64,000 bases of DNA. Source: Ophelia neglecta (taxonomy: Eukaryota). Made by a program: the position numbers and the translations under genes. Below the pieces are notes generated by a model. The model saw only the letters and a list, made by a program, of their open reading frames with translations, was not told the origin of the DNA and made no database searches. Positions 1,801 through 62,362 of this stretch are shown here, piece after piece. Location: the NCBI GenBank assembly GCA_965285935.1, contig OZ260663.1:93062001-93126000 (forward strand), given 5' to 3'. Numbering within the stretch: the stretch's first letter is position 1; each line of letters starts with the position of its first letter.

Positions 1801-2777
1801 ATGTCCCATCTTTTTAGAGTTGCAATGTAAATGCACTGCAAAAGGCATTATGTGGATTCGGAACTTTTCATGCTGTTTCTGTTTATAATAACGCATTCGC
1901 CATCTATTCATGTTGATATATTCATCCTCTTTCGACAAGAAAGCATAGTGATCGCACTTTGCATGATTTAATTCAAACTAAAATTAATCCATGAACGAGA
2001 TTACAATGTCTGGATTTCATTCACATTGGCATGTGGGGATATTCAATTGAGGAGTATTCACTCATACCTTCTTGAGGAGTATTCTACTGCGTTTGATTAT
2101 AACAAGTGGTTATACACGAAGCATTTATAAATACAATGCCCTTAGTTGATATCTTGCTTTACTGGATAAGTGTGATACAGATGATGGGAGCTATGTACAA
2201 GATATAATCCGTGCTTTCTATATATCATTTATCTTGGCTGTCCGCTATGGATGTAATACAACCAATGAAGTCATGTGCTGTTGGATTGAAGGACAAGCCC
2301 TGAAGAAGTACCAGTGGCCAATCTACCAAAGAACTACAGTTTGAGAAACAAAACAACAACCAAATAATAAATTCTGATTTGCATCAGGACACACTGTGAC
2401 ATTGGATGAAATAAGTTGTTAATATGCCTCAGTGTCTGATGGCTCTGTCCCGTATGACGTAGTTCCATATACGGTCTTAAGACATGAGAACGTGCTTTAC
2501 TTTCTTATATTCAGCAGTTAGCTTGACATGCATGTCAGAACAATGCGTGATATAGACAGGAATGGAAGGAGATAACTTGAAGTTAAAAAACGTCGTAAAT
2601 ACATTAACATAAAACATTATTGCCAAAACGTAGAATTATGCCTCAAATTTCGCATCGAATGTAATATTTCAAATTCTTTACTTATAAGCTTATATTACTG
2701 ACTTGGGTGTTGCCCTTTGACTTTCAGTATTATATAGACAGCCTTTCTTTTTTCGTGTCCTAGAATAAGTGAGCGGC

Positions 2778-2892
2778 GAGCCGCGTGAGTGCTGCGCACT
2801 GCGCCGGCGCTATGTTTACCACCCATTGCTTTGCGCCGCGGTACTGGGAACATTAAGTTCTGATACTGACACTACCAGTCTGTGTAGGAATA
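2778..2892 (+). promoter_or_regulatory. Conserved upstream GC-rich palindromic element (before A2)
   Basis: Matches the consensus GAGTGNTGCGCAYTGCGCCGGCGC..ACCACCCATTGC..GCGCCGCGG..AGTTCTGATACTGACACTACCA shared by the other first-exon upstream regions. Confidence 0.7.
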
Positions 2893-9291: not shown

Positions 9292-9816
9292 GTGTTAACA
9301 ACTCCCGATATTTTAATGTTGATTTATCAAGGTGCCCAATAGTGCTTAAACGGATTTATTCACTTATATGTTATGCGTTATTGATAGGAGCACAAAGTTT
9401 GTGAACGTTTATAGAATTCACAATATATAAAGTCTGGATTGTTTACATCTCATGTTACTATGGAGGAACAGCTTGAACTACAAATGTAGGTGTTGTTTTT
9501 GTGCTTTTAAATATAATTGATCTTTGAACGATTACAACAACTTGAATATAATCATAAACAAGGAACATACTTGACGGAGCAGAAGATTATATCAGGATTA
9601 TTAAACTACCATTATTTAGGATCAGGCACTGGACATATACATATTTTAGGATCAATTGGGCTATATAATACGTAGCTTTGTTCAAAAGGTGGGATATAAA
9701 CTGCAATGTAAAATACCTGTTTGTTTTGGCTTTGTACAAAATATAGCGCTTGAAGCCATTCATGCACCATAGTTTTAATTCAATATCATACTGCCTATAG
9801 TAAATAACAACATCAT

Positions 9817-9934
9817 GAGTCGAGCGAGTGGTGCGCATTGCGCCGACGCTGTGTTTTCCACCCATTGCACTGCGCCGCGGCGATGTGAGCGCCGAGTTCT
9901 GATACTGACACTACCAGTTTGAGAAGGAATACTA
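9817..9934 (+). promoter_or_regulatory. Conserved upstream element (before A3)
   Basis: Same consensus; ends ~25 nt before ATG 9960. Confidence 0.7.
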
Positions 9935-16852: not shown

Positions 16853-16966
16853 GAGCCGCGAGTGGTGCGCATTGCGCCGACGCTTTGCTAACCACCCATT
16901 GCACTGCGCAGCGGTGATGTGAGCGCCGAGTTCTGATACTGACACTACCAGGTTGAGAAGGACTAT
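16853..16966 (+). promoter_or_regulatory. Conserved upstream element (before A4)
   Basis: Same consensus; upstream of ATG 16994. Confidence 0.7.
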
Positions 16967-23002: not shown

Positions 23003-23122
23003 GAAGCACCGAGCAGCTGAAGTGGTGCGCCAGTGGAATATATACACAATTACAATAACCATCCTGTTGAAATACTTCATTCTAATCTTAGTGATAATGG
23101 GTATTTGGATACAAACAGTGAC
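23003..23122 (+). pseudogene. Orphan B-type first exon (B2), inactivated
   Basis: Near-identical to B1; ATA in place of ATG at 23055 and the splice donor is deleted. Confidence 0.7.
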
Positions 23123-31908: not shown

Positions 31909-32246
31909 CTTGCTTTGCCATTATATCTATATCGAGATAAACACAGATTGCCTGTCTTAGCGGAGAAACAGCGCTAAAATTGCAAAACCTGAGACAGAAC
32001 CTGTCGCACAGCTTAGCTTTTCGCATTGACCAGGCGAGGCATATTCTAATACACAATCCCAGACTGTAGTATTCTTGCTTTGCCATTATATCTATATCAC
32101 GGTAAACACAGATTGCATGTCTTAGCATGTTAGGGGAGAAACAGCGCTAAAATTGCAAAACCTGAGACAGAACCTGTCGCACAGCTTAGCTTCCCGCATT
32201 GACCAGGCGAGGCATATTCTAATACACAATCCCAGACCGTAGTATT
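31909..32246. repeat. Tandem duplication of ~165-173 bp
   Basis: 31909-32073 and 32074-32246 both begin CTTGCTTTGCCATTATATCTATATC and end CCCAGAC(T/C)GTAGTATT. Confidence 0.9.
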
Positions 32247-32291
32247 GATGCTGGTCTAGATAAGAGTTTAAGTACTCGCTCCCATGCCGAG

Positions 32292-32362
32292 CCAGCCTGG
32301 TATCTGTCTATACATGTTCTGCGGAAGGCATGCACGGGAAGGCAATTCATGTACCAGGCTGG
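32292..32362. mobile_element. Possible tiny MITE
   Basis: 11-bp inverted termini CCAGCCTGGTA...TACCAGGCTGG; no clear TSD. Confidence 0.35.
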
Positions 32363-34613
32363 AATAGGTGTATCGATTACAAACCGCAATATTCTAAATC
32401 TCTGCTATAACCAATGTGTCTGGCTTAGAGCTTTAGTATGCGCACCCTGGCGTCTACAAGCTTGAACATGGATATTGATCTGGTTGTGGTGCTTATGCCA
32501 CTATGGTTATCAACAGGGCGGATCCAAAGTCTTACCAAGGTTGTAGTCTATCATATGGGAGGTTTGGTTGGGTAATCGCTCCCAAACGCGGGCTACATAA
32601 GCGTGCCATGTTAATCTTATGAAAGTGTCTATTAATTATTTCAGCCTTTGGGTGAAACTTAAAACAAACAAGACCTGGAAGTGGGTGGTGTTTTGGAGGA
32701 GAGGGGCCTCACCTCTGTTCTCAAATCCGCCTCTACTATGACATTTGGTATCATTCTGTCAATATAGTTTTTAAATCTCAGGAGATATCGATTTGGCCCG
32801 GTTATATTTCTGTGTGAATGTAGGACATTATCAGATGTTTGTAATGTCAGACGGTGTTAACAAGAACAGACAGTATGTTTCCCATTGTACTTATCTTCTA
32901 TTTAGAGCCAGCATGTGTGTACATGAATATTCGCTAGCTGTTCAAACTGTATAGATTGTTAAGCCATATGTTCAGTGATCATTGGTCTTATATAAATTGT
33001 CCTTATAGTGCGCAAACCGCAATAAAAACATATTCTACACTATTTGTATCGGAGTTTCCCGCATGGAAATGTCTATTGAATAGTAAATTATCACATAGCA
33101 GTGTGCGTTGTTTAGTGACCCTTGGTTTGTGCCACTTCATAATTGTCAGTTGTTAGACTGACCTACATTGAGTACAGTGCATATTTTAAAGCGATGTTTA
33201 AATCGGTTTCCAGCTATATGTGTGTCGACACACATTTTGTCATGCAGAGAGAAAAAAAGGGGTGGCCATCCATTTGATTGATTTATTCAAATAGCATACT
33301 AAGCTCTACTATAGCATCAGCGGTAATCACATCACCCACACCACTTACTCTTCTAAGGTCAAGCTTAATTCTCTCATTTTCATTCCGACATTGCATGCAG
33401 TAATATAGACAAAGCGGTCTTGTAGAACATGCATTAGTGTGTACTTTTTTCATAAACGTCTGAAACCCTCTAGCAGTACCAGCTGCATATTCAAATAATA
33501 GCAGAAATATCGGTATGGCATTATGTCTATCAAGTTCGTGATTTTACAGGAATACAATCATGTGCCAAAAGTCTATTAAACTGTCTGATGTCTCTTATTA
33601 AGAATTATATTATTCTAGGGTGCGCTAAATTGTCATTCAAAGGTCGATCAAATACATATGAAAGGTTCGTATTTTCTCAGCCATTAAATGCAGTGTTTAT
33701 GTGATATATAGGCCCTACAATATGCAATGGTTTTCATGGTCATTTGACGAGGACATCCTATAACGACTTAATAACTTTTATATCCCGCTTTTCCATACAT
33801 ATGATCGGTGCTCCTTACAATAGCACATACCAATAATAAATTACAAAATTATAGCCGTTGTCGTTTACTTAGAATGACTAGATATAGTACACGACTGATT
33901 ATTATGATTAACTCAGGACTGTATTGCAAATAAATTAGTGTAATACATCATCTATACAAACCATAATTTTTTTATACATCCTATATTCATTTGGCATGCA
34001 TGTAAATTCTATATATGTATAGACATGTACATATATATACGTGTGTGATTGGCAAAATGTCACAATGTTCCATGTGGTTCTTGCATTTGAAACAATAGAC
34101 GTCCCAAGAATCGAAATCTCAAGGTTATCCCGTTATCCTTGAATGAACGGGACCGGTTTCGGCCTTTTTTCTCTAGTTAATCGCCATGTTGTAAGTAAAA
34201 TAACAAATCCAAACCATTACGGTAAATGTTGAGTATAACATGCCACAATATTGTCTATCATGTGATAACATACGTTTGAGATGTATAATCAGACATTCCT
34301 GGAGACTGACAGTCAAGTCAAGTTTATCTTATTTGATTTAAAATAATAGGTCTTAAAGGTTGGTATAAAGATCAAGAAGCCAAGTGTGTTTTAAATATGG
34401 ATATGTTATAGCAAATTCTATATTCCTGTTTCGAAGTTATTCCCTATTTCGAGGTGGTCTAAAAACGGTTGAACGTATACGTAACATTTTGTTTCAAATA
34501 TTGTAACCAGTCCACTCGGATACGATATATGAAAACCACTAATTTTTACTTACGACGCACAAGATCTGTCAAAATCTGATATCTGGCCGTCTCCACCGCG
34601 GTGAGTTGCAAAA

Positions 34614-34938
34614 TTGGTTGGTTGGATTTTGGAGGTTTTATGTGGCTTTCAACACTTGTCGGTCATATCGCCACGGTGTCTTCTTGTGACAAAGGGCTCG
34701 ATGCCCTCTTTGGAGTGTTGCCCCACTGAAGTACCTGCCGTAGACCCCAGACAGGGAACCCCACCCAGTCACATTGTACTGACACTGGGTTGACCAGTCC
34801 CGATGCTACCCCCGAAATACCGGGCGCCTGGCAGGGGGGCTATCAGTACCAATTTTTAAGTCTTGGGTTTTGACGCAATCGAGATTTGAACCTCTATCTA
34901 CCACTTGCGAGGCGGACCCTCTAACCACTCGGCCAACC
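34614..34938 (-). mobile_element. tRNA-derived SINE (possibly MetaSINE-like)
   Basis: Minus strand: A box TGGCCGAGTGG (34935-34925), B box GGTTCAAATCTC (34892-34881), body CCCAAGACTTAAAAATTGGTAC..GTGTCAGTACAATGTGACTGGGTGGGG, (CCAA)n tail. Family name is from memory and unverified. Confidence 0.75.
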
Positions 34939-35173
34939 AATTCCAAGTATACAAGGCAATGAATATAACAATGGATTCAACAAGGATGGATACCCCCTGG
35001 TTTATAGAAAAAAAAATTGGTTGATAAAAAAAATACGAGAGTGGATAGCCGGCAGACAAATAATTCATTGATCAAAATTAGTACCTTAAATCTGTCAAAA
35101 TCATCAGAAACCAGCCGCGACAACATCACACACATAATAAGTTAATTTCCAGCTCACCAACAGTAAATAGACA

Positions 35174-35482
35174 GGCTGTTCTGAATCGGCAGACGCGCGA
35201 ACGCGGACCTCCAAAATTTGTAGCATTACGGTATGAACTCTGGCACTGTCAGGAGACTGATCCGACTGGTGTCCAGTCAACTCGCGCGGGCCACAACTCG
35301 CGCGGATGCCAAGTCGCTCGGGGTTATTTTCACAGTTATTGTGTATGGATGGTTTACTGCATTGCCGTGGAGTGTCACACTACGTATGCAACACCAAACA
35401 TGGCGGGACACGTTGTTTTGGTCGTGGAGGGCGCTAAAACTAACTTGTGGTCATTTTACCTCCAGATAGATCGCGAGAATTT

Positions 35483-35531
<49 letters not shown>

Positions 35532-36641
35532 CTGCTCATTCCCATGTCACAGTGCTTTCTAAACTCAGATAATAGAAATGAAATATGTTGGGCGACTACG
35601 TATGGCACTCGAAGGCTAGTTCGCTAGTCACCATAGGGCTTCTTCTGCAAACAGGCCGACTTGGATAAAGCGTGGCTACGTTTAGGAGCGAGTAATGGTT
35701 TCTATTTATTTCCTTTATATTTACAAATCATAAAAGTAGTAATTGATGTCTTGACAACACGTCAAACATACTAAACTATATTAAAACAAGCACGCGCGAG
35801 TTGCCTGCCGTGCGAGTTGGCATATAAAGTCGTGCGAGTTGGGACTGCCACGAACTTATCAAGTAATCACTGACGGGCAATTAATCACATTAATGAAGGA
35901 GGGGGGGGGGGATGGGGGCTAGTCGCTAATACAAGCAGGAATGTGCTAGTGATTTGATGGAGAGGGGGGGGGTGTCAACAAGGCTTTCCCTCTAAAATCC
36001 TTTTTGTATCAAATCACTAATTAACCCCCTAAATAATGATAGATAAAGCTGCATTATTAGGCATGCGATTTCCACTAAAAATAATAGTACCACTATGGGA
36101 TTGCATATTTCATATATATCTGCTGATGCCACATTTCTAATTCCCCCAAAACAGTTAATTAATGTTAATAATTTCGTAACCCCCAATTACAACAGGTGGG
36201 GCCACAATGTATTGGAAAGACCCCCTCACCTCCGATGATTTGTCACCCATAATTATTATAAACCCTTAAACTTTTGTGGGTAGAAATTTTAATCCCTTAA
36301 ACACTACCGACTCAAGCCTAGCTGCCGCAAATATTAACATATACATGTATATAGTGTCGACATGGCCGATATTGTCCGTGGCCGATTTGAGTAATCCCGC
36401 TTTGGTTGTGCCGGTGGTTATAGATTTCGGAAATAATGCTGCCAAGCTTTTAACAAATTATTTCGAGGCCTGCAAGTTGACAGTTGACAGGCAGAGTGTG
36501 ATTATTTCAACTTCCAGACTAATCCAACTGTGCAGGATGTGAGCGATTCGCTGTAGCAGTTACCATAGGCCGTTACCGTAATGCTAGAAAATTTTGGAGG
36601 TCCGCGTTCGCCGTTCGCGCGTCTGCCGATTCAGAACAGCC
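35174..36641. mobile_element. Non-autonomous DNA transposon with 9-bp TSD (Mutator- or Merlin-like)
   Basis: Perfect 30-bp TIR GGCTGTTCTGAATCGGCAGACGCGCGAACG, extending imperfectly to ~60 bp; TSD AAATAGACA at 35165-35173 and 36642-36650; no transposase ORF. Confidence 0.85.
35485..35529. repeat. (AT)n microsatellite
   Basis: About 22 AT units inside the transposon. Confidence 0.95.
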
Positions 36642-38894
36642 AAATAGACATGCAACAAAATAAAATATTCCATATTGTAAATGCACATCACGTTAAGGAT
36701 GTACTTTTAGTTCTTTTCAAGGGGTTCTCATTGTGATAACCATATGCGCGGCCGCCATCATAGCAGTACCTAAACTTGTGGTTGGCATTCTTAGTTTTCC
36801 AGGGCTTCTGTTACATTTTACATTTAGGAAGTTTGTATGTCATATTCAGCAGGTAAATATAAGTACATCTACTACCAAACAATACACTAACAATAATAGG
36901 GCCAACTTGCTCTTGAAGTAAAGATACTGTTTTAATAAATCTTATAAATCTTACTTTCATATTATACCAGTAATTCACTCTGTTTATTTTTATTTCTTAA
37001 CAGGAGGCACGATGCGATGATAGCCCAAAGTCCCCAGAAAGATACATTGAAACGTATATCAGATTATGGAAAAAGTGATAAACAGTACGATCCCATGCTG
37101 GGCAAAGACAGGGACTACATTCTACTCCAGACAGACACGGGTCGTTGCGTCCAGATGTTGTGACACCTGGTGGAGCTTTCTGCCCTCTACCTCTATCCCC
37201 AACATCGCTTAACCTAGACAGGGAAAGTACAATCCACGTGAAACCAAACCACCTGTGCCACCCGTGGGAGAGTACCCATGCTGCACTACAACGACGGCAT
37301 TACCAGTTCCCGAATGCCCATCATGCGGTTTTTCATTGCATTTTCACATAAGAGGTATAACTGCTCATCCTAAAATCTAACTGAAATGATTTTTGGTCAT
37401 AAAAAATGGATCGGACACTATATATGCATCGACCAGCCTATCCAGAGTCAAGGATAGTGTTTCCTCGAATACACAGCACAGCACGGAGAACATCATTTCA
37501 CGTCCGGAACATACTTATTAAAAGTACACTCTTACCGTGGACATATACGTGGAATAAGCGAAATCTCTCCGGGAAAGGAAATATTCTTATAACGGACCAA
37601 AAGTGTCTATTCGTTCGGGTGCCCTGCCATCAACGTGAAACCTTCGGATACTGTGTTAATGCCATCGGAATCAATCCCTGACAATGGACCCTCCACCGTG
37701 TAGCACTACAAGGAGAGTGCGCGCCAAGGACTATGCTACATCCAAAATCCCTTTAATTAACACATTCTGCAGTTTTACACGTTATATAACTGCACATTCG
37801 CACTTACAATGGTCAATATTTCAACCTAGGCCGCAGGCACACTCACTATTATAATGCTTCACCGTTTTTTCACAAGAAAAAACGAGTTATTTTTTAATTT
37901 AAACTATCCTCGCCATTCTCAGCACGTATAATTTGGCAGTATACTGCCTACAAAGAATGGATATATATAATTAAGCTTCGTTGTGATAAGACGTAGTGGA
38001 AATAAGCTATGTACAAATATACTATTGAAAACTCAACATACAAATATAAATCAAATTAATTAGTGTCTCAACAGAAAGAAGAGATCTATCAACTGTCTGG
38101 AAATGACTTTTCTGTGATTTGCTTCTGCTTAGTTTGTAGGAGTACACTGCCTTAAAAGAATGAACATCTATACCTTACGTTCACCAAAACAAAAGACATG
38201 TTTGAACGCTAAGCATTATTGGAGTACACATATGTTTAGAACAATATATAATGTCTTCAAGAACGCCTATGTATTATAATGGACTATGTCTTGCAGACAT
38301 GCCGAGATGTATCACCAGATTAGTCAAATTTCGCTGTAAATAACGTATTTCTCATCTTTGAGTTAAACACAATATGTGTTAGAAATAAACAAGGTTGGTT
38401 TTTCACATGTGCATTATATCGTACCTCTGAGCCGTTTGCTCATTCTCAACATAACATTATCCACGGTCAAAGCCTGTATTAGGCGGTAAGTCAATGAAGC
38501 TGTATGACAACATCATATAAAGTAACAGCTAGATCATTTATAGTATGGCTGTCAAAAAGAAATGTTGATTGTCAATAATTTGATATTGGTCCTTTAAATA
38601 AGCGCATACCTGAACATGCCGCGAATAAGCATCTTGTTCCATATTACATTATTGTCACAGTTGCAAATAATTGGGCAAGCATGAGTGTCTTTCAGATCAA
38701 ACTTGATTTGTAAGCTATTACTTTTGCCAAAACTACGTGAAAGACACTAACCAGTAATGAGCTGATGATCAGCACTCTTCTGGTGTGAGCTCCCACCTTA
38801 CAATCCTAACTAACCATTTCCTTTTTCTGTCAGTTGCCTTGGAAATGTTTAAACCTAAATTGGTAATCTTTCATCATTGTTTATATATACAGCG

Positions 38895-39015
38895 ACCGCC
38901 GCAAGCTGAGCGAGTGATGCGCACTACGCCGGCGCTGGGTTTACCACCCATTGCATTGCGGCGCGCTGATGTACATCGAGTTATGATATTGACACTACCA
39001 TTTTGTGAAGGAATA
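38895..39015 (+). promoter_or_regulatory. Conserved upstream element (before A6)
   Basis: Same consensus; ~115 nt before ATG 39133. Confidence 0.68.
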
Positions 39016-42950: not shown

Positions 42951-43686
42951 TTAGAAGGACACAGCTAATATGATGACACTGTTGATGTGATAAAATGCCG
43001 TATAGCCATTAGACGAATTAAAGTTATTCATGATTATATAAATAGTATGATGTAAGAATCGATGCGGATTACAACTACATTCATAATGCGGATAGTATTC
43101 ATTTCCTTTCGGCGAGAAAAAATATTGATGAAATGTTGGATAACGTTAATGGAAACAGTGTTTGTCTACACAACTACAATAAATAGTTTGTAATAATATT
43201 GACAAATAGGAATATATTCAGTTTAAAATGACACAAAAACCTTCTTCAGGAATAATATGTGTTGTGGCTGATTACGAAGGGATGGAACAAATGCCATTAA
43301 AAGGGAAAAATTCTTTCAGTGATATTGGATCAATGTCATGCGTAGCAGCGATATGTTCCAAGGTGACTCTGGATTAAAACGCACTGTCTCAGTGGCATCA
43401 TCATTTAGGCCCCTGATGCGAGGGTCATTCTAGTTTGGGCAGTGTTTATTTATTGCATGACAAGAACTTCCGAATGGCAACCACTGTATGCTTAACTGGA
43501 TAAGGCATAATGATTGATTTATATAAAGCTGCATCGTCGTGATGTTGATATTAATGATTATACACATTAGAATATACGGGACAATAGCATATTATACCTA
43601 TTATCTATTTCAATCACTTTTGGTTGCATTTTAACATTTAAGTAACAAATAGACTGAATTTCAACTATATTAGACCTGAAAAAAGT

Positions 43687-43795
43687 GAGCCGCGAACAGA
43701 GCAAGTGCTTCGCACAGCGCCGGCTGTGCATTTACCTTTTGCACATCTTGTTTTGAGTTCGTATACTGACACTACCATTTTGTGCAACTTTACTA
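43687..43795 (+). promoter_or_regulatory. Conserved upstream element, internally deleted (before B4)
   Basis: GAGCCGCG..CGCACAGCGCCGGC..GAGTTCGTATACTGACACTACCA. Confidence 0.55.
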
Positions 43796-45589
43796 GGGGG
43801 ATATTTGAATTTAAATATCATTACAATGAATACAAATTTGGAATACCTTGTTCTGTTTATAGCGATGTTGACTATTTGGATACCAACAGAAGCCTCGAGT
43901 AAGTACTGGTTTTCAAGGTTCAGTTAGAGGAAACGCTATCTTGTAGCCAGCCCAATCGCTCCTCATTTACGGATTGCATAAATATGTGTTAGGGCAATCC
44001 TATGTAAAAAGTGCGGTAAAACGAGTTGTACTTTAGTTCAAAGCGCTCCTCTAATTTTCTAATTGTATCCTAAAACGGACGGCTTCTATTCAATTGACGC
44101 TTTTAATGGTGACCTTGTTTAAAGTATGGTCAATCTCAGTCCCTAATAATATCTTATGCATAATGTGTTATAATTTCAAATAACATTGGCTAAACACTCC
44201 TGAATGTATTTATGCTGAAACGGACACGTTTTAATATAAAACATTTTAAGGCAAGGTAAATTCCCACTTATAGGCCGCAATTATATGCATACAATCAATG
44301 AGTTTATAGATATACCTCGTTGCCAACGACATATCCTCTTTCTTGTTTGTTGAATCTCGCTTCAGCTTAAATTAAAGCTAAATAACACACAAATTTGCGT
44401 CTTCGTCCGGTATATAGGTGACCATCAATGTATAACCATTCATGCAGTATATTTTTATTTTATTTGCAAGGGTTATGATTCGATTTGAAATTCAATAAAT
44501 ATCAGCATAACAATCTTATTTGACGAAGATTATTAAGTGACAAACCATCCAGTCATAGGTACGGAACTAATTCAAACTATTTGAAAAAGAGTCAACGTGT
44601 ACAGAAGAAAGTGTTTTAAACATTTTATTGGTAATATCAAACATTCAAGAAGGTTAAGTAAGGCGACACATATCTTGTATGTGCCTCGTATCTAGGCTAT
44701 GTCGGACATATGTAGACGCTCGAAAGGTGGGCATGGTTGGCTGAATCTTATAAAAACACATTTTGGTTGTTAATCTCTTTTGCATTGTTTAATGTGAATT
44801 GTTTTCTAAATACCAGCCTTCTTGTAAGTAAGCCAAGCTTACAATAACACTAGTGCATTTAAATATGTTTGTCCTTACTCTTACTTTTGAATAACACGTT
44901 GTTTATTAACATTGAGCTTTCCAAGAACAAAAAACTGTTTAAAAACAAATTACGTGTAATAGCTGGGTTTGCAAAATATTCTGGCACAACCCGTGAAACA
45001 ATATTAAGAACACTTCGTTTCAATTTACATTTAAATATGCGAATCACAAGACATTAGAGTCCATGCCCTTATTATCTCAAATTCATTCAATGGATCATTC
45101 TTGATAATTGATTTTGCTTTGTCCCCCGGGTATCCATTCCCGTTATTTCACAGTCTGTGAGCATTACATTCAGTAATTCAGCAGAAGAGCATACACAATA
45201 GTATTCCGTGTTATGCCTTTGGTATGTATCAAATGTATGTCAAGTCAGATGCTCTTCAGTGCCCTTAACGTGACAGAAATCATTTACAAGGAAAAACTAC
45301 CTGTTTTTTGTGCCATAGTAAAGCACGTAGCGACGTGCACATATGTTCTAAAAACATCAATATATAATTTAAGTACACGCTAAGACCGACACAACCACTA
45401 AAACGCCTTTTGTGAGAAGTGATGCTTCATCAAACAAGCACATGCTCTGTTTCCCGCCCATAGGCTGTCTGTGTTGGCAACATTTTGCAAACGGGCAGAT
45501 TTAACGGATAAGTGTTTTGTATCGGTTTTACAGAAGTATAAGTTTTGCATTCGCCTTATGATTTGACTACAATGGATTTCTATTCCATC

Positions 45590-46475
45590 AATCAATATTC
45601 TTCCAAATATCACTTTTTGTCATATTACTGATGCTCTTTCAAATGCTTTGAGTTAGTCACCTCAGCTAAGAAATATTAGGAAGTGGTAAAGCAAAGTCCA
45701 CGAAGTGCTTGGGATACTTGGTCCACACTGCTCTTGTTTTGTAGTACTTAATTTACCGCAATCTTTACTAAGTGGAAGGGTTGACTGTTAACAAAGTAAA
45801 ATATGTGGACCTTTGGTCGAGGTTTGTCTATAATTCGATAGCTTCAAAAGTGTGTCACTGGGTGCCTCGTGCCGGGTCCACAGCGGCTCGTGGCAAGCCT
45901 CGCGTATTGCTCGAATATCTAAAGAATACAGATGTTTTGTAATGGAAGTATGTGATATCTTCCTTGAGTACCATGGAGTCAATTTACAGCATAATCGGAA
46001 TGTATATTTATATGCATTATTTACCCATACTTAACATTCCATATTCTTCCAAACATCGCTTTATGACATATAACTGATGCCCCCGCATATACTTTGAGTT
46101 AGTCACCTCAACTAAGAATCATTAGGAAATGCTAAAGTAAAGTCCGCCAAGTGCTTGGGATATTTGATCCACACTCCTCTTGTTTTTTAGTACTTGATTT
46201 ACCGCAATGTTTACTGGATGAGTGTAAACAAGCTAAAATATGTGGACCTTTGGTCGAGGTTTATTTTCAATTCGATAGCTTTCTTTCATCAAAAGTGTGT
46301 CACTAGGTGCCACGTGAATGGGGCACAGCGGCTCGTGGCATTGCCTCGCATTGCATTCAAAAACTATGGAACGCAGATGTTTTGTAATGGAAATATAGGC
46401 AAGCTTCCTACTGTACCAGTGAGTCAAGCATAATTGGAATGTATATTTATATGCAGTGTTTACACATACGTAACA
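45590..46475. repeat. Diverged tandem duplication, unit ~445 bp
   Basis: ATATTCTTCCAAA..TTTGAGTTAGTCACCTCA..GTGGACCTTTGGTCGAGGTTT..GAATGTATATTTATATGCA present at ~45590-46035 and ~46036-46475. Confidence 0.85.
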
Positions 46476-48224
46476 GGCGGCTGGCAGGGTAATCCACAAT
46501 AACGGGGATTTAATGAACCCCCATAGACTGAGTGTAGCTTTTACATCCAATTGGATGATTTGTATTCACCACACGTTGGAATATACGTTAGGTTCCAAGA
46601 TTTCTTTTCTTGATCTTGATTTCTTTACTGATCCAATGCAAAGCCCAAGAACTGGCGGACAAAGACCTTGGTTATAAGGCATAATTAGCTATGTACCTTC
46701 CGAGGATGAAAACCACTCCGACCAAGAACAGCTATTCGTGTATTCCGTTAAGTGGCCATCAAAGGGTATTGCCCTGATGTTCGGATATCAGACGACTATG
46801 TATTTCAAAGGTAGATCAAAATGACAATTAAGTTCAACAGCCCAAATTTCTGCAGCATTTCTAGATTCACATACTTAACCTGCTATAGATTACCAGTATC
46901 AAGTAGGAATTTTAAAGCATACGCATTTTCTATAGAAACGGCGAAGGTTGCAGTATAAAACTTAAAAAAACATTGTCAATCTTTAAATAGCCACAGCTTA
47001 TATTCATAACAAATTCATATATTATCATCCTTGATCAGTCTTTTCACACATATAATCAGGCTTTCAGCTCTACGAGCCTTTCATCGAGCATTCTTCATTG
47101 ATCGGTTAGAGTAGCAAGCTTTGCCCTGAGCGGTTTTATACAGAGACGGTGAGTCATGCTGCCCTACATGTTGGCAGGCATGTGGGAAGTATTACCATTA
47201 GTACGAGATATCTGACAGCATAGAGCAGGCGCTTTGTTCGCCTGCTAATTTGCCGGTGTTTCAACATTTGATACATGATATGAACTAAGAGTATGTAGAG
47301 TTCCATGATATAAACACGCTCAACGCTAACACCTGGTGAAGTTAATAACATTTGGAATGAAACCCTACTTAATCTCATCTATTAAGATGTTTCTGTTGAT
47401 TTATTTTTGCATCACCTGAGAAATAAATTATTGCTATGAGACGCTTATGAAAGAGATATATGATGCACCTCCGTATCCGAGAAACATGGTTAAAAGAGCA
47501 AAACATATTTGACTTTATCGCTTTTTCATGTTCTGTCCTAGTCTGTACAGTGGTGGTCTATATTGATCTAGCGTATGTCATTGTATTGTACTGTCAGAAT
47601 TATCAGATATTCTAATCATGATGTTCTTTACCATGTTTCCTAATTTTTTCTAAAAATCGTTCGAAATATCGCAATATGCCTCGCTTTCACTCTTTTCACG
47701 ATTCCTCCAACCCTCCGAACTTCTACCCGTGTGATAACCTTCTATTCAAGCCGGGTGCATCATTTTTTATATATTTAAGGGGGGGGGGGGGGGGGGCTAA
47801 CAGGTTTCGGGAAATACATTTTTTCCAGCATATATTATAAAAAGCTAGTGAGTGCAATAAAGTACATGTAGTTAAACATCATTCCTCTTCCAATAACTTT
47901 TTGTTGTGTTAATTCAACCTTAAGTGACATTCTTAAAAAGGAAAAGGGACGGTGTCCCTCAAGAGAAACACAGACTAAAGTATGACTGACGTCTTCTAAA
48001 AATATATTTAATTATAAGTGTTGGGGTGAGACTATTTTCTTCAATAGGTATAAACCAATACAAATCTATTGTATTATTTAAATACGCCGTTACTTTATAA
48101 CCGGCTTCGGAGCTCATGAATGAGGACATTTAATTTAAACCATGTGAATAAAACCTCCTTAAAGTGAGAATTTATCAAACAAAAATAATATACGCTTTCC
48201 ACGTTTTTCGTCAACGGGAACCTT

Positions 48225-48377
48225 AATTACAGAATAGGCTGTAAGGGAGACGCGCTGAGCTTTGTGGAATCGGTCTGCTCGTGGAGACAGACGTGTCGGA
48301 TAAACAGCTGGCTACTGAACTTGACCCGTGCCTAAGTATGGTGTCGTACTCACAATTACAATACAATTGTGTACTTG
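48225..48377 (+). pseudogene. Frameshifted 3' half of a SUEL lectin exon (B4)
   Basis: NYRIGCKGDALSFVESVCSWRQTCRI / DKQLATELDPCLSMVSYSQLQYNCVL, followed by the donor GTAGGT. Confidence 0.75.
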
Positions 48378-49029
48378 GTAGGTAAAACACATCGGAATGT
48401 ACAGGTTTTGTTTGTTTAAATAGCTCTTTAAAATGAGCTAGGTAGTGCATAGACATTGTCCGAATTCAGCCTCAGAAATTTGATCGGTCTTGGTGATTTG
48501 TGCACATCTCACCCACGCCCCCTCGGCAGATTTTTTTTAATGCTGGCCAGAAACTATTATGACGGAAAGTTGATATTTTCTTGTAGAAAATGCCAATCCT
48601 GATCCATTTTCCCCAAAATTAGGGTAATAGTTTATCTCTGGGAAACATGCAAATCATAGTATTGTCTAGCTTTGGCTCTTATACAACCATATAATATACA
48701 TCTAACGAAGATACTGTTTACTTTGTTAAAGGTAGTCTTATAAATCAAACCCAGCACAAACATGAATAAAATTAAAATTTTAGATCGTTTTCGGTAACAC
48801 TTGTATTAGAAGTTTTCAGAAAGGGACTGTTATTACTGTTAGTCCACATTAAATTGACAATCGCATTACACAACCATTCAAGAAACTGCTTAAAATCATT
48901 TGTGTTTAAATGGTGCTGTGATTTATAATAATCACAATAATAATTTACAGTTTTGTTACTGTATAATTTTAATCAGTTTGTAAATAATTTTATGGCAGTT
49001 CAAGCCACGCAGTCCTGCCAAATATATAG

Positions 49030-49209
49030 CAAACCTTTATTCACAGTGAGAAACTTGGCCTTAGCCACACACAATCCTAGGCTCATTGGTCTATCTCACC
49101 CCCGAGCAGCCACATTTAGGAGCATCGAAAGGACGACTGGGTCTGATCATGAGATCGAACACCAGCGGCCTGCGTGCGAGTCCGACGTGTTGCCATTGAA
49201 TCACGCCCC
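49030..49209 (-). mobile_element. tRNA-derived SINE (tRNA-Ala-like head)
   Basis: Minus strand GGGGCGTGATTCAATGG (A-box-like)...GTTCGATCTC (B box, 49160-49151); ends AATAAAGGTTT. Confidence 0.6.
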
Positions 49210-50766
49210 TCCCCCCCCCCCCCCCCAAACAGTAAAAAGGCCCATCTATTTCTAAGCACTTTTTTTGAGTGGGTTTGTGAATAAATGATGTTTTGATATT
49301 GAAATTTCCATATAACCATGTTATGAATATCATTGTATCGTTGAACTTCTTTTTCAGGTATTCGCATTTTGTCAATCATACCAGCCGCCGTTATCATAGC
49401 AGTCCCCATAGTCGTGATCGGCATTATTAGTGTCCGAAGGTCAGTTTTAGGTTTTTCATTACCGCGGTCATTTATAAATCATATACGCTGGATAACTATT
49501 AACGTATCTGCTACCTATTTGTAGGTATTCCCAATGACGAGACTATAATTCTTCGCCCACTATTGGCTACAATCGACAAATGCACTCTTTCACAGAAAGA
49601 TCGAATTATATTTTATGAATGCCGATCTTATTAGTATATATTCTTATTATTCTGTCTGAACAGGAGGCACGGGGCTGTGTTTGAGTCGGCGCATTCTCCC
49701 CATATGGATACAATGAAATTCGTGTTACATTCAACAAATATTGCTAAAGAATACGATCCAATGTTTGGCAAAAAACAGATATCGCGGAAATCTCACCAAA
49801 GCAAGAAGTACACAACTACTTCAGACCGACACGGGTCAGTGCGTCCGGATGTGGTGACACCTGGTGCAGAAATTCCGCCTTTGTACATGTACCAGTCATC
49901 GGACAGTAACCAGTTAGATTTGGAGCACCTTGTATTTCATGCATATTTGCCACTAGAGTTCACGGAAGCAGACACAAAGACTCTCGATACAGACCCGCCG
50001 GTACCACCTCCACAGAATATACCTGTTCCTTCTTCGACCGGGGCAAGAGATGCTGAAAGCCTTCAAACATGATATTGTTATTTAGAATGTCGATGCAAAG
50101 GGATGCCATTATATCTATACAAGTTTAACTGGGCAACGGTTATGTTTATATTTATTTTCTCTAATTGCAATAGTACATTACTAGCATCTTATATTACCTT
50201 CATCACCAAAGAAATTGAAATCCTGTTGAATGTGTCCCTATGCAAACACAAAGGCATGTTATATCCGACCGTATTTCAAGTCCTAAATGTCAATATGTCG
50301 GTTTTCATGGGTGCTTAGGCCTATGGGTCCTTAGGCCTATACTTGATAACGGTTTATTCTCTTATTGTACTATAATAACAAATCCTTTATCGCATTAATG
50401 AATGTGTGCTGCTGCCTCAGATGAAGCAACAACTTCATTTTAAGCCGGAATATAAACATGAACTAACTGTTACTAGTTTAATATTGGTTCCTGATGTAAT
50501 GGCATGCCTGACAGTTGTTTGGATGAGGAGTTTAGTTCATTTACCATTTAACATAAGATCAAAACCTCAAATCGTATTACTGTCAAAAAAGGAGGAAAAG
50601 ACAATAAATGATGAGTTGACTTAAGTGTCTGGCTGATTATTAACAACTGACTGTAGCGAGTTCACACCTTACAATCATAACAAATCATTTCCAGGTCCTG
50701 ACCTGTACCATTGGACGTTTAATATCTAAGTTCGAGACCTTTTAACCATTGTGCCATGAATACGAC

Positions 50767-50890
50767 AGCCGCAAGCGGAGCGAGTGCTGCGCACTGCGCC
50801 GGCGCTATGCTTACCACCCATTGCATTGCGCCGCGGTACAGTGTGCATCGAGTTCTGATACTGACACTACCAGCTTGTGAAGGAATACTA
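50767..50890 (+). promoter_or_regulatory. Conserved upstream element (before A7); best hairpin example
   Basis: 5' arm 50788-50810, loop TTACCACCCATT, 3' arm 50823-50847. Confidence 0.72.
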
Positions 50891-51002: not shown

Positions 51003-54000
51003 ATGGATAAACTGCTGAAGGACTTCATTCTACGCGTTGTGATCATGGCAATATGGCTACCAACAGTGTGCTCGAGTAAGTAATGTAAATACATTATCAT
51101 TTTTCAAGGAACGCCATCTTGCGCAGTAACCGACAGTGTTGCTCTGCGGGCTAATATAACTCGGACTGGAGGCGTCATTTGAGTGACCTTAATCGAGTTT
51201 GTTCATATATTTGCTTATAGTGCACCGTTGATTGGCATTTTTTACGCAATATATTGTTTATATTGGGGTCACATTATTTATGTTACTGGAAATGAAACCA
51301 AGCAATGTGAACGATTAACTTTCTACGTCAAAAATGTTTGACATGCTATGCATTGAATACGTGTATGTGCAAACATATTTCGTGTACCAGTGCGAAAATA
51401 ACCAAATTGTTATCATAGAAGCCCCTAATGTTGTTTGTGAAATAAAATCACAATTAGAATATTCTAAACGAAAAGCAACCGTGACTGAACCAATATATTA
51501 TCAGATGGTATATCAGTTTAAGTTACACACAATTAACACAATGAGTCTGGTTGTATATCTTAATTCCCGTCCCAATATCATCAAGGCGTGTGTCATACCG
51601 AAATAACTATTTGCAGTGTATAACTTAATAAAATGTTTCCAGCTTTAGATAAAACACAAAGCCAAGTTTGCACATAAAGACTAATATTATCTTCTTCAGT
51701 ATAAACAAAAACCATTTAGTTTTCCCTCGATTAACGTGGGCAGCACATTAAAGATATCGCATATGTGTTTCTAACACGCATACTATTAGCATTTGTTTTG
51801 CATTTGCAGTAGAAGATGAAGTTTGTTTATGGAGTACATACGACGCTATATGTGACGAAAACGAAGTTATACAAATGGAGCATGCGCTCTACGGGCGGAT
51901 GTCGGTAGGACGCTGCATACCGGAGAACGTAGGTATCATGATGGGCTGTCAGGTGGACGTTTTGAGCTACTTGGATTCGGTTTGCTCTGGAAGACAAACG
52001 TGTCATCTAAGATTACCGCAAGATCTCTTAGCCTCCGAATATCAGCCCTGCCAACGAGGGTTGGAGTCCTACCTTCAGTTGAAATACAAATGTGTAACTG
52101 GTATGTAAACCAAACAAAGTTTAAAATGCCAACATTAATTTATTTAATATTAATACAAAGCCGGGAAGTTGCACAAATTACACGTTAACAAGACAAGATA
52201 TCTACAACGTCCTATAAAGGAGGAGGATTGGGATGGGGAGTTCATACTTACCTAGATATTCGAAATAAATTCAGGGTCACATTCAAAACGAGATAACATG
52301 ACCTATGTCCATGTCCTCAGCAGGTGGTTGTCTAATCTTATATTTATCTCCGCCAACGTGTTATCTGTCACGGCAGCTGCATTTATTTCAGTAAATGCAT
52401 CAATGAAAGTCTCTCCCCCTTAGATGCCATATTGCTTCTGTTGCGGTCTTACACATGTCAATATCCTTCTTCTAGCTCCATTACTCATTATTTAAGCACA
52501 TAACCTATTGTACGTGCAGACGTATATGCTAAAATTAACTGTTTTGTATTTACCAGCGCCATTATTTGAAAGTAATTCTTTACTTCGTGTTAACATTTCC
52601 TTGTTATTTCTAGTAAACGCCTCACCAAAACCATGTGCCGGTAATCCTATACCAGTCAAGGGAACTACAGGGATTTTGGCCAATTTCGTAACCGGACGAA
52701 CTGAGCAGGGATCGCAGGACTGTCCCTGGGAGGTACGGGGGTCGCCTGGACAAAGAATCCGCCTCATATTACATGACTACGGTGTTTGGACACATTCTAA
52801 ACCTCTGAGAGACGACTCTGGAGTCCATGACCTTGGAGTACTTCCACCAGAGAGGTCGGATATATGTCACATATACGCTCGGGTTACGGAAGGTAAGTCA
52901 TGTTTATTCAAAAAATAATTATTTTGCCCCTCATTGCAATATTTTTCGGTGTCCCATGACTGTGTTATCACGATAACATATGTCCTTTTGTTTATTGCCA
53001 GGCCATACAGAGAGTTCAGTCACTATTTGTGGCGGCGAGGTAAGAGAGAAAGTAGTATACCTCTCAGAGACAGAGGGCGTTCACATCGCCCTAACCGCCC
53101 CAAAACAAAGCAAGAACTCTGCGTATTTCATGCTTCGCTTTGAAAGTAAGTGAAACGGTCTCAAATTAATTTAAATAAAACAACAGCTGTTTTCCCCCCA
53201 GAAAAATCATTTAAATAATCACAGTTAAATGTATCCAGTCAAATGTAATGCAATTGAGTAGTTTTTATATCATTTCAGTCATAGGGTGTCTAACGTACAC
53301 ACCACCAGAGGGTGCGGTAATTGTGCGTTATGAAAACGATATATCAGTAACTTGCCCATATACTGGAAGTGAGTGGAAGGTGGTATGTGATGGGACAAGG
53401 TGGCAAACAGAAGGAAACGTCACAAACTGTACTGAGACACGTAAGTGTAATAAAAGGTTTAACCGGAAATAAATTGTTTACCAGTGATTCTATATTTATT
53501 TGAATTAAGGAATGTTATCATTATAATCATATTTTAGATCTTGAAAAGGCGGAATTGGAAAGAAAAAAAGAGTTGCCGGTTTCCAGTGAAGCGGTGTTTC
53601 AGGGTGAACTTACCTTATCTCAAGGTGATGATCAAGAACGAAATGTTGATTCAAATGATGTCAACACTCGTTAATAACGTACCCTTTTTGTGAAGAGGCC
53701 TTTCGTGCAGTATGCACACAATATAGTAAAATGGTTCTTAGCAACACATTCGGCATCAGTTTTAATATTAGATTTGTAAATATATTTGAAATATAATCAT
53801 GTGAAGTCTTTTCAAATGCATTTTATCTTTGACATCGGAACTAAATAATAGTCTACTTATATTTCCAGGACTCGTGATTGCATTCTTTTTATCAATTGCG
53901 GTACTCATAGCGGTCATTATTATGGTGATCGGCATTGTTGTCCTCCGAAGGTAAGTGGCGCGTGTCGTTAGAAGATTCTTTGATCCGATTTCCACAGAAC

Positions 54001-54712: not shown

Positions 54713-55485
54713 ATAAAATCTCGTTGGTTTCCAATAGTGTAGAGAACGAACTGAAATATTCAAAATTATGCCATTATTGTGAAGTTCACATTTATGAAGA
54801 GTTCAGCTACATGTAAAATGCGAACAGGCTCCATTCGCATCGGTAAGAAGATATATTACTTAGACCTGGAATGTTATAAAGCAGATACGATGAAGACAAT
54901 AATGCCTGGGCCGTCATCTGAAGAGGAAATTCGCTTTTGTAACCACTATCCAAACTGGCAAACACCGAATGCTCATGTCAGTCGTCTGCGTTCTATCACG
55001 CGTTGGACCTCGATCACAGATTTGATTACAACGCATCACGTAAAGCACAGTCAATGGTGGTGGAAAATGCCCTGGTTGTAAATGTTGCCTCTCTTCCCCC
55101 GATACTACCTTCCACTTAGAGTTTATTTATTAGACAAAGATCCAAGATGAACATGTCATATGTAAAGAATTGTGTTAAAAAATACAATGAATTTTGTACG
55201 AGTTGGAACTCTACCAAAAGATTAATATCCGCCGAGTGCCCTGCATATAATTACAATATCCTGCTACTCACTAAAATATACAAATTGTCAACTTAGGTTA
55301 AGCAATGGTGTACTTATGGGATGCGCTTTAATTTTATTATTTAACTAATGTGGTATTCATGAAACTTCAACCGTTGACAATATAAATCGAAGCACATATG
55401 TATATTCTTAGTCATGTTCATATGTCATTTCTTGCGGTTGTCAGTAATGTAGCTAATTCAATATTACAGTCTGATATAGAATGGG

Positions 55486-55610
55486 TGAGACGCCAGCTCA
55501 GCACCTGGTGCGCACTGCGCCGGCGCTGTGTGTGCCACCCATTGCACCGCGCCGCGCTACTGTGTACATCGAGTTCTGATACTGACATTGCTTTGTGCAG
55601 GCATAGTACG
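55486..55610 (+). promoter_or_regulatory. Conserved upstream element (before A8)
   Basis: GGTGCGCACTGCGCCGGCGC..CCACCCATTGCACCGCGCCGCG..ATCGAGTTCTGATACTGACA. Confidence 0.68.
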
Positions 55611-61425: not shown

Positions 61426-61900
61426 CATAGCAAATATTATGACGTTTTAGGACGAACACCGCTTCCATTTACAACTGCTTAATAATATTTTGAATCGTAA
61501 TGAAGACCTCACCTATTTATAAACGAGGACAGAATTCTTCTCCTCTCGACAAGACTTTATCGTTTACAATAGATTCGGCTAGTATTGAGTAGGCTACTCT
61601 TAACCCTTTACAACATGTTCTTTTGGTGGGTTTATCAGTAAGCAAATATATGGCAAACACAGTATGGTATAAACATGGATGGACACAATTTAGGACGACC
61701 ATGTTTTCCTCTTTTTACCAACATAAACATCTTGCTTGGATTGAGATTCAAATACTTCTTTCGTGATTGATAAGCAACACCAAAATGTACATGGCACATA
61801 AGTGGTAAATCATTTCAAATATCTCATGGTTGCCCTTTAACAGTGTTCTTAAATATACACCTATACATTATATTACACCTTTATTGGACCTGGACAATAT

Positions 61901-62018
61901 GAGCCACGGGCACAGCGAGTGTTGCGCACTGCACCGTCGTTATATTCACCACCCATAGCAGTGCGAACTGGTACAGGGCATTGAGTTCTGATTACCAGTT
62001 TGTGCACAAATACTACGT
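61901..62018 (+). promoter_or_regulatory. Conserved upstream element (before B5)
   Basis: GCGAGTGTTGCGCACTGCACCGTCG..ACCACCCATAGCAGTGCGAACTGGTACAG..GAGTTCTGAT. Confidence 0.6.
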
Positions 62019-62047
62019 AGAATAATGGACAAATACATATAATTACA

Positions 62048-62120
62048 GTGAATACCCTGTTGGAATACTTCGTTCTTGTCTTAGCGAAAATGGCGATTTG
62101 GAAAACAACAGGAAGTCCTA
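62048..62120 (+). pseudogene. Orphan B-type first exon (B5)
   Basis: (V)NTLLEYFVLVLAKMAIWKTTGSP, 73 nt with intact donor GTAAGT, but ATG changed to GTG; no B body before the next promoter element. Confidence 0.7.
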
Positions 62121-62238
62121 GTAAGTATTGTGTCATTTATCAGTTATGGGAGAAGTCATCTGGAACCGAGTCCAGTCGCTCCTTGATTTCTGAATATTAA
62201 AATGTGTGTCTACGAACAACTTATAATTGTGATATCGA

Positions 62239-62362
62239 GAGCCGCAAGCGGAGCGAGTGATGCGCACTGCGTCGGCGCTGCGTTGACCACCCATTGCATT
62301 GCGCCGCGGTACGGTGTGCATCGAGTTCTGATACTGACACTACCGGTCTGTGAAGGAATACT
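62239..62362 (+). promoter_or_regulatory. Conserved upstream element (before A9)
   Basis: Near-identical to the element before A7. Confidence 0.72.

What the first reader, a model, noticed from the sequence alone, without database searches (positions are those of the whole stretch)
50778..50872. Conserved hairpin element with apparent compensatory changes upstream of the receptor first exons
Seen: a ~115-bp GC-rich element recurs 11 times (2778, 9817, 16853, 23445, 29316, 38895, 43687, 50767, 55486, 61901, 62239), 25-115 nt before the start codon, and is far better conserved than its AT-rich flanks. By hand, UGCGCACUGCGCCGGCGCUAUGC (50788-50810) pairs with GCAUUGCGCCGCGGUACAGUGUGCA (50823-50847): 21 pairs including G-U, two mismatches and a 2-nt bulge, around a conserved ACCACCCAU loop. 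A nearly fixed GAGUUCUGAUACUGACACUACCA follows. Apparent double substitutions keep pairing: GAUGC/GCAUC (62259) vs GGUGC/GCGCC (9830, 16864, 23464); AUGC/GCAU (50807) vs GUGU/GCAC (9851, 55528); G-C to U-A in GUCGU/GCGAA (~61936). Inference: an undescribed structured cis-regulatory 5'-leader RNA or pre-miRNA-like hairpin shared by the cluster. Alternatively, it is a palindromic DNA promoter element (two GCAYTGCGCC repeats) coordinating paralog choice, analogous to the protocadherin CSE.
Basis: partly seen in the sequence, partly recalled or inferred. Interest (0 to 1): 0.8.

Follow-up and report, generated by a model that had tools for sequence, protein, structure and literature searches.

The report
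Shared promoter module, not RNA hairpin
A 115-base GC-rich element sits in front of each of about 99 tandem lectin-type receptor genes and is better conserved than their coding exons, but it behaves like a shared DNA promoter module, not like a folded RNA.

Summary
The repeat is real. There are 11 copies in the window and about 99 in the genome. All lie in one 750-kb, two-armed cluster of SUEL-lectin receptor genes on contig C5, always on the gene's strand just upstream of exon 1. It is the best-conserved block of the gene unit: 84% identity against 70-80% for exons, with flanks unalignable.

The hairpin with compensatory changes does not hold. On 56 copies, paired cells and covariation equal the shuffled means, three stem pairs are broken in 25-39 copies, and RNAalifold predicts no pairs. 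The median folding z-score is -0.6.

Conservation comes in fixed-spacing blocks. The strongest, ACCCATTGCAY, fits the XCPE2 core-promoter consensus in 43 of 56 copies, on the sense strand only. In the 18 copies with a short spacer, no ATG lies between the last block and the start codon (about 15 expected), while ATGs do occur inside the element. This suggests transcription starts within the element or at its 3' edge.

Most likely it is a TATA-less promoter module private to this cluster. No RNA data exist, so the start site is inferred. The idea of paralog choice is untested.

The parts
2767..2887 (+). element copy 1
   Evidence: nhmmer hit 119 bits; aligned in A1 and A3
9813..9926 (+). element copy 2 (short-spacer class, ATG 43 nt after the 23-mer)
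   Evidence: nhmmer 116 bits; spacer
16855..16960 (+). element copy 3 (short-spacer class)
   Evidence: nhmmer 108 bits
23441..23561 (+). element copy 4 (short-spacer class)
   Evidence: nhmmer 118 bits
29312..29427 (+). element copy 5, diverged (CCAATCATTGCA), in front of a diverged gene unit
   Evidence: nhmmer 95 bits; no XCPE2 match
38894..39010 (+). element copy 6
   Evidence: nhmmer 112 bits
43683..43786 (+). element copy 7, with a 16-17 nt deletion that removes the ACCACCCATTGC block
   Evidence: nhmmer 72 bits; deletion seen in A3
50762..50882 (+). element copy 8, the reference copy of the finding and the best-folding copy of all 56
   Evidence: nhmmer 126 bits; z -3.4
50789..50799 (+). 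block GCGCACTGCGC, an 11-bp palindrome with one central base (NRF1-like half-sites)
   Evidence: mean information 1.59 bits; GCGCANTGCGC present in 26 of 56 copies; exact 13-mer 25 times in the cluster and 2 times elsewhere
50813..50826 (+). best-conserved short block ACCACCCATTGCAY; ACCCATTGCAT (50816-50826) fits XCPE2 VCYCRTTRCMY, which puts the predicted +1 at A 50825
   Evidence: information 1.73 bits; XCPE2 fit in 43 of 56 copies, sense strand only; consensus from PMC2659449
50850..50873 (+). 24-bp near-invariant block GAGTTCTGATACTGACACTACCAG; in the family consensus it ends in an initiator-like CCAGTTT
   Evidence: information 1.70 bits; 83 genome matches against 0 control; YYANWYY here in 33 copies (42 of 56 by the column count)
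51003..51075 (+). exon 1 coding part (signal peptide, 73 nt), followed by donor GTAAGT at 51076
   Evidence: read; conserved ATGGATA...GTAAGTA in the copies
51111..51121 (+). second conserved non-coding block ACGCCATCTTG (YY1-type core) in intron 1, 35 nt after the donor
   Evidence: present 34-39 nt after the donor in 44 of 53 copies; 0 of 53 control segments
55485..55599 (+). element copy 9
   Evidence: nhmmer 99 bits
61898..62006 (+). element copy 10, a degenerate duplicate with an 8-nt deletion in the 24-bp block; the exon-1-like sequence after it has GTG in place of ATG
   Evidence: nhmmer 86 bits; sequence
62236..62355 (+). element copy 11
   Evidence: nhmmer 121 bits

Best explanation
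The element is a DNA-level, TATA-less promoter module (core plus proximal promoter). It was inherited with each duplication of a SUEL-lectin receptor gene and kept by purifying selection on protein-binding blocks.

Shown:
- About 99 copies exist, all in one cluster and all in the gene's orientation, just upstream of exon 1.
- It is the best-conserved block of the gene unit.
- Conservation is block-wise, with strict spacing.
- It has no RNA-structure signal.

Inferred:
- RNA polymerase II starts inside the element or at its 3' edge. One candidate start is the XCPE2-like ACCCATTGCAY. The other is the initiator-like CCAGTTT that ends the 24-bp block.
- The GC-rich upstream half (GCGCACTGCGC, GGCGCTG) and the 24-bp block are bound by sequence-specific factors, possibly multi-zinc-finger proteins.
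- The intronic ACGCCATNTTG adds a downstream site.
For: 1. Location. Genome searches find the motifs almost only in C5:92.63-93.37 Mb. There are 39 copies on the minus arm and 60 on the plus arm.
2. Strength of conservation. Identity is 84% in 33 of 35 units, against 70-80% for coding exons. Flanks and introns can be aligned only between the closest paralogs.
3. Selection in recent duplicates. In 11 independent pairs the substitution rate per site is 0.062 in the element, 0.104 upstream and 0.088 downstream (Fisher p 3e-4).
4. Footprint-like pattern. Blocks of 1.5-1.7 bits are separated by variable columns. In 47 of 56 copies there is no indel across the 87 core columns.
5. Core-promoter match. 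ACCCATTGCAY fits the XCPE2 consensus (PMC2659449) in 43 of 56 copies, on the sense strand only. About 3 background matches occur in 520 kb of both strands.
6. ATG pattern. In the 18 short-spacer copies the first ATG after the 24-bp block always opens the receptor reading frame (0 upstream ATGs, about 15 expected). ATGs do occur inside the element at -109, -86, -66 and -34.
7. RNA structure is rejected, and Rfam gives no match.
Against: - No transcript data exist for this organism in the tools. The three runs that hold the locus are DNA, so the start site is not observed.
- In the 35 long-spacer copies, upstream ATGs occur at the chance rate between the element and the start codon (101 observed, 99 expected). 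That is awkward if transcription starts at the element in those genes.
- The XCPE2 and initiator fits are post-hoc consensus matches.
- The DPE-like AGTTCT sits one base off the canonical register.
- No binding factor is identified.
- The sub-motifs are not enriched outside the cluster, so they are not general promoter words of this genome.
Confidence: 0.7

Rival explanations
1. The element is transcribed as the 5' leader of each mRNA. It is conserved as a linear RNA signal, for example a binding site for an RNA-binding protein or a shared small-RNA target such as the 23-24-nt invariant block, not as a fold.
For: The element has a fixed orientation and lies close to the start codon. The invariant block has the length of a small RNA. 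No TATA box or observed start site excludes an upstream start.
Against: ATGs are not avoided inside the element (67 observed, 75 expected), while the short spacer just downstream has none. The GC-rich palindromic blocks and the XCPE2 fit are typical of DNA sites. No antisense copy of the 23-mer exists elsewhere in the genome at up to 3 mismatches.
Confidence: 0.15
2. One reading: a structured RNA hairpin (cis-regulatory leader or pre-miRNA-like) maintained by compensatory substitutions.
For: The reference copy folds at -46.8 kcal/mol with z -2.2. Sense-strand folds are slightly better than antisense folds (median z -0.63 against -0.13).
Against: All five covariation measures equal their shuffled means. 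RNAalifold gives 0 pairs on 56 copies. Three stem pairs are broken in 25-39 of 56 copies. Only 7 of 56 copies reach z below -2, and the described copy is the extreme. Rfam gives no match.
Confidence: 0.03
3. There is no function of its own. The similarity is kept by gene conversion or recent spread, or the element is a relic of a mobile element that carried exon 1.
For: This is a tandem family with evident recent duplications. Duplicated or orphan copies of the element and of exon 1 exist, at window 61898 and 16397.
Against: The boundaries are the same in all copies. Variable columns are interleaved with near-invariant blocks, whereas conversion would homogenise the whole tract. The element has fewer substitutions than the flanks within the same recent duplicates. 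No copy lies outside the cluster. The two degenerate copies, at 43683 and 61898, belong to a diverged gene unit and to a pseudo-exon 1 respectively.
Confidence: 0.07

Closest known systems
Conserved sequence element (CSE) of clustered protocadherin promoters
   Same: A short, highly conserved motif is shared by the individual promoters of a large tandem array of cell-surface receptor genes. It lies just upstream of each first exon (about 22 bp, common to all 52 Pcdh promoters; PMC3333863).
   Different: Here every gene is complete, with its own tail exons and no shared constant exons. The element is about 115 bp and composite. It contains no CTCF-type consensus. Stochastic choice is not shown.
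XCPE2 core promoter element (VCYCRTTRCMY, -9 to +2)
   Same: ACCCATTGCAY fits all 11 positions in 43 of 56 copies, in the sense orientation and in a TATA-less context.
   Different: XCPE2 was defined in the hepatitis B virus X promoter and in human promoters. Initiation at this site is not observed here. The conserved block extends 3 nt further 5' (ACC) than the consensus.
ZNF143/Staf binding site SBS1 (example TTCCCATTATGCACCGCG)
   Same: It shares CCCATT and GCAYYGCG with the element's CACCCATTGCAYYGCG (PMC3627581).
   Different: The cluster motif is 2 bp shorter between the halves and has CA where SBS1 has TT. This genome uses the canonical spacing: 196 matches against 0 control. The 2-bp-shorter form is barely enriched, at 22 against 6.
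NRF1 / P3A2 / Erect-wing palindrome GCGCATGCGC (from general knowledge, not verified here)
   Same: The GCGCA and TGCGC half-sites are in palindromic arrangement in the upstream block.
   Different: There is one extra central base (GCGCA-C-TGCGC). It is present in only 26 of 56 copies. Binding was not tested.
YY1 site (core GCCAT; from general knowledge)
   Same: ACGCCATCTTG sits at a fixed place downstream of the promoter in 44 of 53 copies.
   Different: It lies in intron 1, about 110 nt after the start codon, not within about 25 nt of a start site.

Membership tests
Structured cis-regulatory RNA or pre-miRNA hairpin | Base pairs maintained by compensatory (covarying) substitutions | tested here: not met
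   Covariation is 0.117 against a shuffled 0.117. Seven pairs show double changes, against 7.0 in shuffles. RNAalifold gives 0 pairs.
Structured cis-regulatory RNA or pre-miRNA hairpin | Folding more stable than shuffled sequence across the family | tested here: not met
   Median z is -0.63, and 7 of 56 copies are below -2.
Structured cis-regulatory RNA or pre-miRNA hairpin | Element is transcribed; small RNA products | not testable with these tools
   No RNA run holds the locus.
Known Rfam family | Score at or above the gathering threshold | tested here: not met
   0 matches in the 64-kb window.
Dispersed mobile element (MITE or Helitron relic) | Copies dispersed and unlinked to the genes | tested here: not met
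   All strong matches lie in C5:92.63-93.37 Mb and are oriented with the genes.
XCPE2-type core promoter | Match to VCYCRTTRCMY in the sense orientation | tested here: met
   43 of 56 copies match, 0 on the antisense strand, with about 3 background matches in 520 kb.
XCPE2-type core promoter | Transcription starts at position 10 of the motif | not testable with these tools
   There are no RNA reads. The ATG pattern is only compatible with it.
Protocadherin-type CSE / CTCF promoter-choice element | CTCF-type motif in each promoter | tested here: not met
   CCASYAGRKGGCRSY (recalled from memory) with up to 2 mismatches gives no hit in any element. The hits lie in the Sushi-like exon.
Protocadherin-type CSE / CTCF promoter-choice element | Variable first exons spliced to shared constant exons; stochastic single-promoter use | tested here: not met
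   Each unit carries its own transmembrane and tail exons. Expression pattern is not testable.
ZNF143/Staf SBS | 18-bp YYCCCANNATGCAYYGCG with canonical spacing | tested here: not met
   The cluster motif lacks 2 bp. The canonical form is used elsewhere in this genome, 196 against 0.
SUEL-lectin receptor gene (context of the element) | Pfam SUEL_Lectin above its cut-off | tested here: met
   39.9 bits against a cut-off of 31.4 for the exon at window 51797-52108. CUB is weak (E 0.18). Sushi is not detected by Pfam.

The most novel reading that the evidence does not exclude
The module is a cluster-private promoter code, with a long 24-bp block plus GC-rich sites. A dedicated multi-zinc-finger or architectural protein reads it and lets each cell activate one or a few of the ~99 SUEL-lectin receptor genes. 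This would be an invertebrate counterpart of protocadherin or olfactory-receptor promoter choice, built from unrelated sequence.
Probability: 0.1. Interest if true: 0.8.

Novelty: new member of a known kind. Interest (0 to 1): 0.35.

Why it matters
The finding removes a false lead: there is no new structured RNA or miRNA family here. What remains is a clean and unusually strong case of promoter conservation. About 99 tandem receptor genes have ectodomain exons that diverged to 70-75% identity, yet they keep a 115-bp upstream module at about 84% with fixed internal spacing. That makes the module a ready-made handle for several questions. Which factor binds it? Are the genes co-expressed or used one at a time? 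In which cells is this large lectin-receptor repertoire used? If the genes are used one at a time, the locus would be an independent invention of receptor choice.

Tried and rejected
- **RNA hairpin.** All were negative.
- **Short upstream coding frame inside the element.** Rejected. The ATG at GTGATGC is present in only about half the copies. Indels of 1-2 nt occur inside the would-be frame, and there is no 3-base periodicity.
- **tRNA-derived or SINE origin.** ARAGORN finds nothing, and there are no dispersed copies.
- **CTCF site in the element.** None found.
- **Canonical ZNF143 site.** The spacing is wrong.
- **DPE after the XCPE2-like site.** AGTTCT fits DSWYVY but at +27 to +32, one base off. 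Not counted as support.
- **Start-site mapping by reads.** No RNA run holds the locus. The three runs are DNA from one sample.
- **Cross-species copies.** An exact 20-mer scan of metagenome contigs found nothing. No eukaryotic relatives are reachable with these tools.
- **Joined spliced protein model.** None was built or searched. Exons were scanned one by one by reference. The large protein searches were not used.

Full report
**What is there**

The window is G000:C5:93062001-93126000 of a 762-Mb eukaryotic genome. It holds nine to ten tandem gene units of about 6.5 kb. The 11 listed copies are all real. The 3' 23-mer recurs 9 times with up to 3 mismatches, against none in shuffles.

The genes encode single-pass membrane proteins.
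- One exon passes the Pfam SUEL_Lectin cut-off at 39.9 bits against 31.4.
- A CUB match is only weak (E 0.18).
- The Sushi-like exon is not recognised by Pfam.

I scanned exons one by one by reference. I did not build or search a joined spliced model.

**Extent in the genome**

BLAST of the element against the whole genome gave 40 scored matches, all in C5:92.63-93.35 Mb. The motif CCACCCATTGCANTGCGC has 61 matches with 0-1 mismatch, all in that interval. The 23-mer has 83 matches against 0 for the control, and 81 of them are in the interval.

Merging the positions gives about 99 copies.
- 39 lie on the minus strand at 92.628-92.932 Mb.
- 60 lie on the plus strand at 92.938-93.371 Mb, with one outlier at 93.5075 Mb.
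- The two arms are head to head, and their innermost copies are 5.8 kb apart.

The element is therefore not a dispersed mobile element. Contigs from three DNA runs of one sample confirm the multiplicity independently. Word depth is 573-649 over the element, against about 20 beside it.

Other SUEL-CUB-Sushi genes noted elsewhere in this genome by first-stage readers gave no match in these searches. The element therefore seems private to the large cluster. This is only partly tested.

**How conserved it is**

I collected 56 distinct copies from the window, 30 small loci and a 196-kb tile of the minus arm.

- A profile from 250 nt upstream to 400 nt downstream of the element start shows a sharp island of conservation over about 115 nt. 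Upstream sequence is near random. The leader and even the signal-peptide exon are weaker.
- Against 35 paralogous units, the element is found in all. It shows 84% identity over at least 60% of its length in 33 of them.
- Coding exons reach 70-80% and are found less often. The upstream flank and the intron are found only in 3 close paralogs.
- In 11 independent recent duplicate pairs the substitution rate per site is 0.062 in the element, 0.104 upstream and 0.088 downstream (Fisher p 3e-4). Indels are about ten times rarer in the element.

**The RNA hairpin**

- 79.0% of cells are paired, against a shuffled mean of 79.0 (252 of 500 shuffles reach it).
- 7 pairs show double changes, against 7.0 in shuffles.
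- The covariation score is 0.117 against 0.117.
- Pairs 41/98, 46/92 and 60/75 are unpaired in 36, 39 and 25 copies.
- The top mutual-information pairs are subfamily signatures, and none of them is a pair of the stem.
- One C-G to U-A change (columns 51/82) is in a different register and represents a single event in five close copies.
- RNAalifold predicts no pair at all on the 56 copies, and only a weak structure without compensation on 10 copies.
- Per-copy folding gives a median z of -0.63 on the sense strand and -0.13 on the antisense strand.
- Rfam has no match and ARAGORN finds nothing.

The self-complementarity comes from GC-rich, partly palindromic DNA words. The RNA-structure reading is rejected.

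**Anatomy**

Information content defines five blocks: GCGCACTGCGC, GGCGCTG, ACCACCCATTGC, GCCGCGG and the 24-bp GAGTTCTGATACTGACACTACCAG. They are separated by variable columns. In 47 of 56 copies there is no indel in the 87 core columns. Interleaved variable and invariant columns with fixed spacing are what protein footprints look like. Gene conversion would not produce this pattern.

GC content is 57% against 35-39% in the flanks. CpG observed/expected is 1.20 against 0.9.

Both GCAYYGCGCC repeats occur in 14 of 56 copies, always 32 bp apart. The palindrome GCGCANTGCGC occurs in 26 of 56.

A further conserved block, ACGCCATNTTG, lies 34-39 nt after the exon-1 donor in 44 of 53 copies and in none of the control segments.

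**Where transcription may start (inferred)**

No RNA run holds the locus, so this rests on sequence alone.

1. ACCCATTGCAY fits the XCPE2 core-promoter consensus VCYCRTTRCMY, which spans -9 to +2 (PMC2659449 and PMC4581360). It fits in 43 of 56 copies and never on the antisense strand. About 3 matches occur elsewhere in 520 kb of both strands.
2. The only recurrent initiator-type word (YYANWYY) is CCAGTTT at the 3' end of the element, found in 33 copies by one count (42 of 56 by the column count).
3. The copies fall into two classes.
   - In 18 copies the start codon lies 19-48 nt after the 24-bp block. The first ATG after that block always opens the receptor frame: 0 upstream ATGs, about 15 expected from shuffles.
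   - ATGs do occur inside the element at -109, -86, -66 and -34.
   - This fits a 5' UTR that begins within the 3' half of the element or at its edge. In that case the 5' arm of the proposed hairpin would not be in the RNA.
   - In the other 35 copies an extra 90-110 nt separates the element from the start codon and carries ATGs at the chance rate (101 observed, 99 expected). This is unexplained. These genes may start downstream, may tolerate upstream reading frames, or may be poorly translated.

**Comparison with known systems**

- **Protocadherin CSE.** This is the closest analogue in logic: a motif of about 22 bp common to all 52 promoters of a tandem receptor cluster (PMC3333863). It differs in three ways. 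Each gene here is complete and has no shared constant exons. No CTCF-type consensus lies in the element. Choice is not shown.
- **ZNF143 site.** The ACCACCCATTGCAYYGCG block resembles the ZNF143 SBS1 (PMC3627581) but lacks 2 bp. The canonical SBS is strongly used elsewhere in this genome, at 196 against 0. The shortened form is barely enriched, at 22 against 6. It is therefore not a canonical ZNF143 site.
- **NRF1 and YY1.** The NRF1-like and YY1-like resemblances rest on general knowledge only.
- **Sub-motifs outside the cluster.** They are not enriched there. TGCGCACTGCGCC occurs 25 times inside and 2 times outside. ACTGACACTACCA occurs 43 times outside, against 37 for the control.

**Verdict**

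The compensatory-hairpin interpretation is rejected. Within a known kind (family-specific conserved promoter modules) this is a new member, notable for its length, its strength and its 99-fold recurrence. Paralog choice is possible but has no support yet.

Noticed in passing
window 51111-51121, and the same place in 44 of 53 copies: Conserved intronic block ACGCCATNTTG (YY1-type core), 34-39 nt after the exon-1 splice donor. It is absent from the control segments.
   Followed up: partly
window 379, 7881, 14224, 20891, 27369, 41697, 53302, 60108 (+ strand): A CTCF-type consensus (up to 2 mismatches, one perfect match at 379) recurs at the same place in the Sushi-like coding exon of each unit (codons T-P-P-E-G-A). 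There are 12 hits in the window against 2.4 expected. It is probably a by-product of coding conservation.
   Followed up: no
G000:C5:92.628-93.371 Mb: The cluster has two head-to-head arms, with 39 minus-strand and 60 plus-strand element copies. Their innermost promoters are 5.8 kb apart, at 92,932,187 and 92,937,963. One isolated copy lies at 93,507,523.
   Followed up: partly
spacer between the element and the start codon, all copies: There are two spacer classes, 19-48 nt in 18 copies and 81-158 nt in 35 copies. The long class carries 0-6 upstream ATGs per gene (34 of 35 have at least one), at the chance rate. Its origin and consequence are unexplained.
   Followed up: partly
window 61898-62134, 16397-16498 and 23040-23141: A degenerate duplicate of the element is followed by a pseudo exon 1 (GTG in place of ATG), 338 nt upstream of the intact copy at 62236. 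Orphan exon-1-like copies lie about 450 nt upstream of the elements at 16855 and 23441.
   Followed up: no
whole genome, e.g. C1:4322961-4351605: The canonical ZNF143/Staf site TTCCCACAATGCAYTGCG occurs 196 times against 0 for the reversed control, partly in local groups. The host features of these sites were not examined.
   Followed up: no
window 29312-38893 and 43683-50761: Two gene units are much more diverged than their neighbours: many exon families are not detected and the spacing is longer. They carry the two most degenerate elements in front of gene units, one of them lacking the ACCACCCATTGC block. They may be pseudogenes or a separate subfamily.
   Followed up: no
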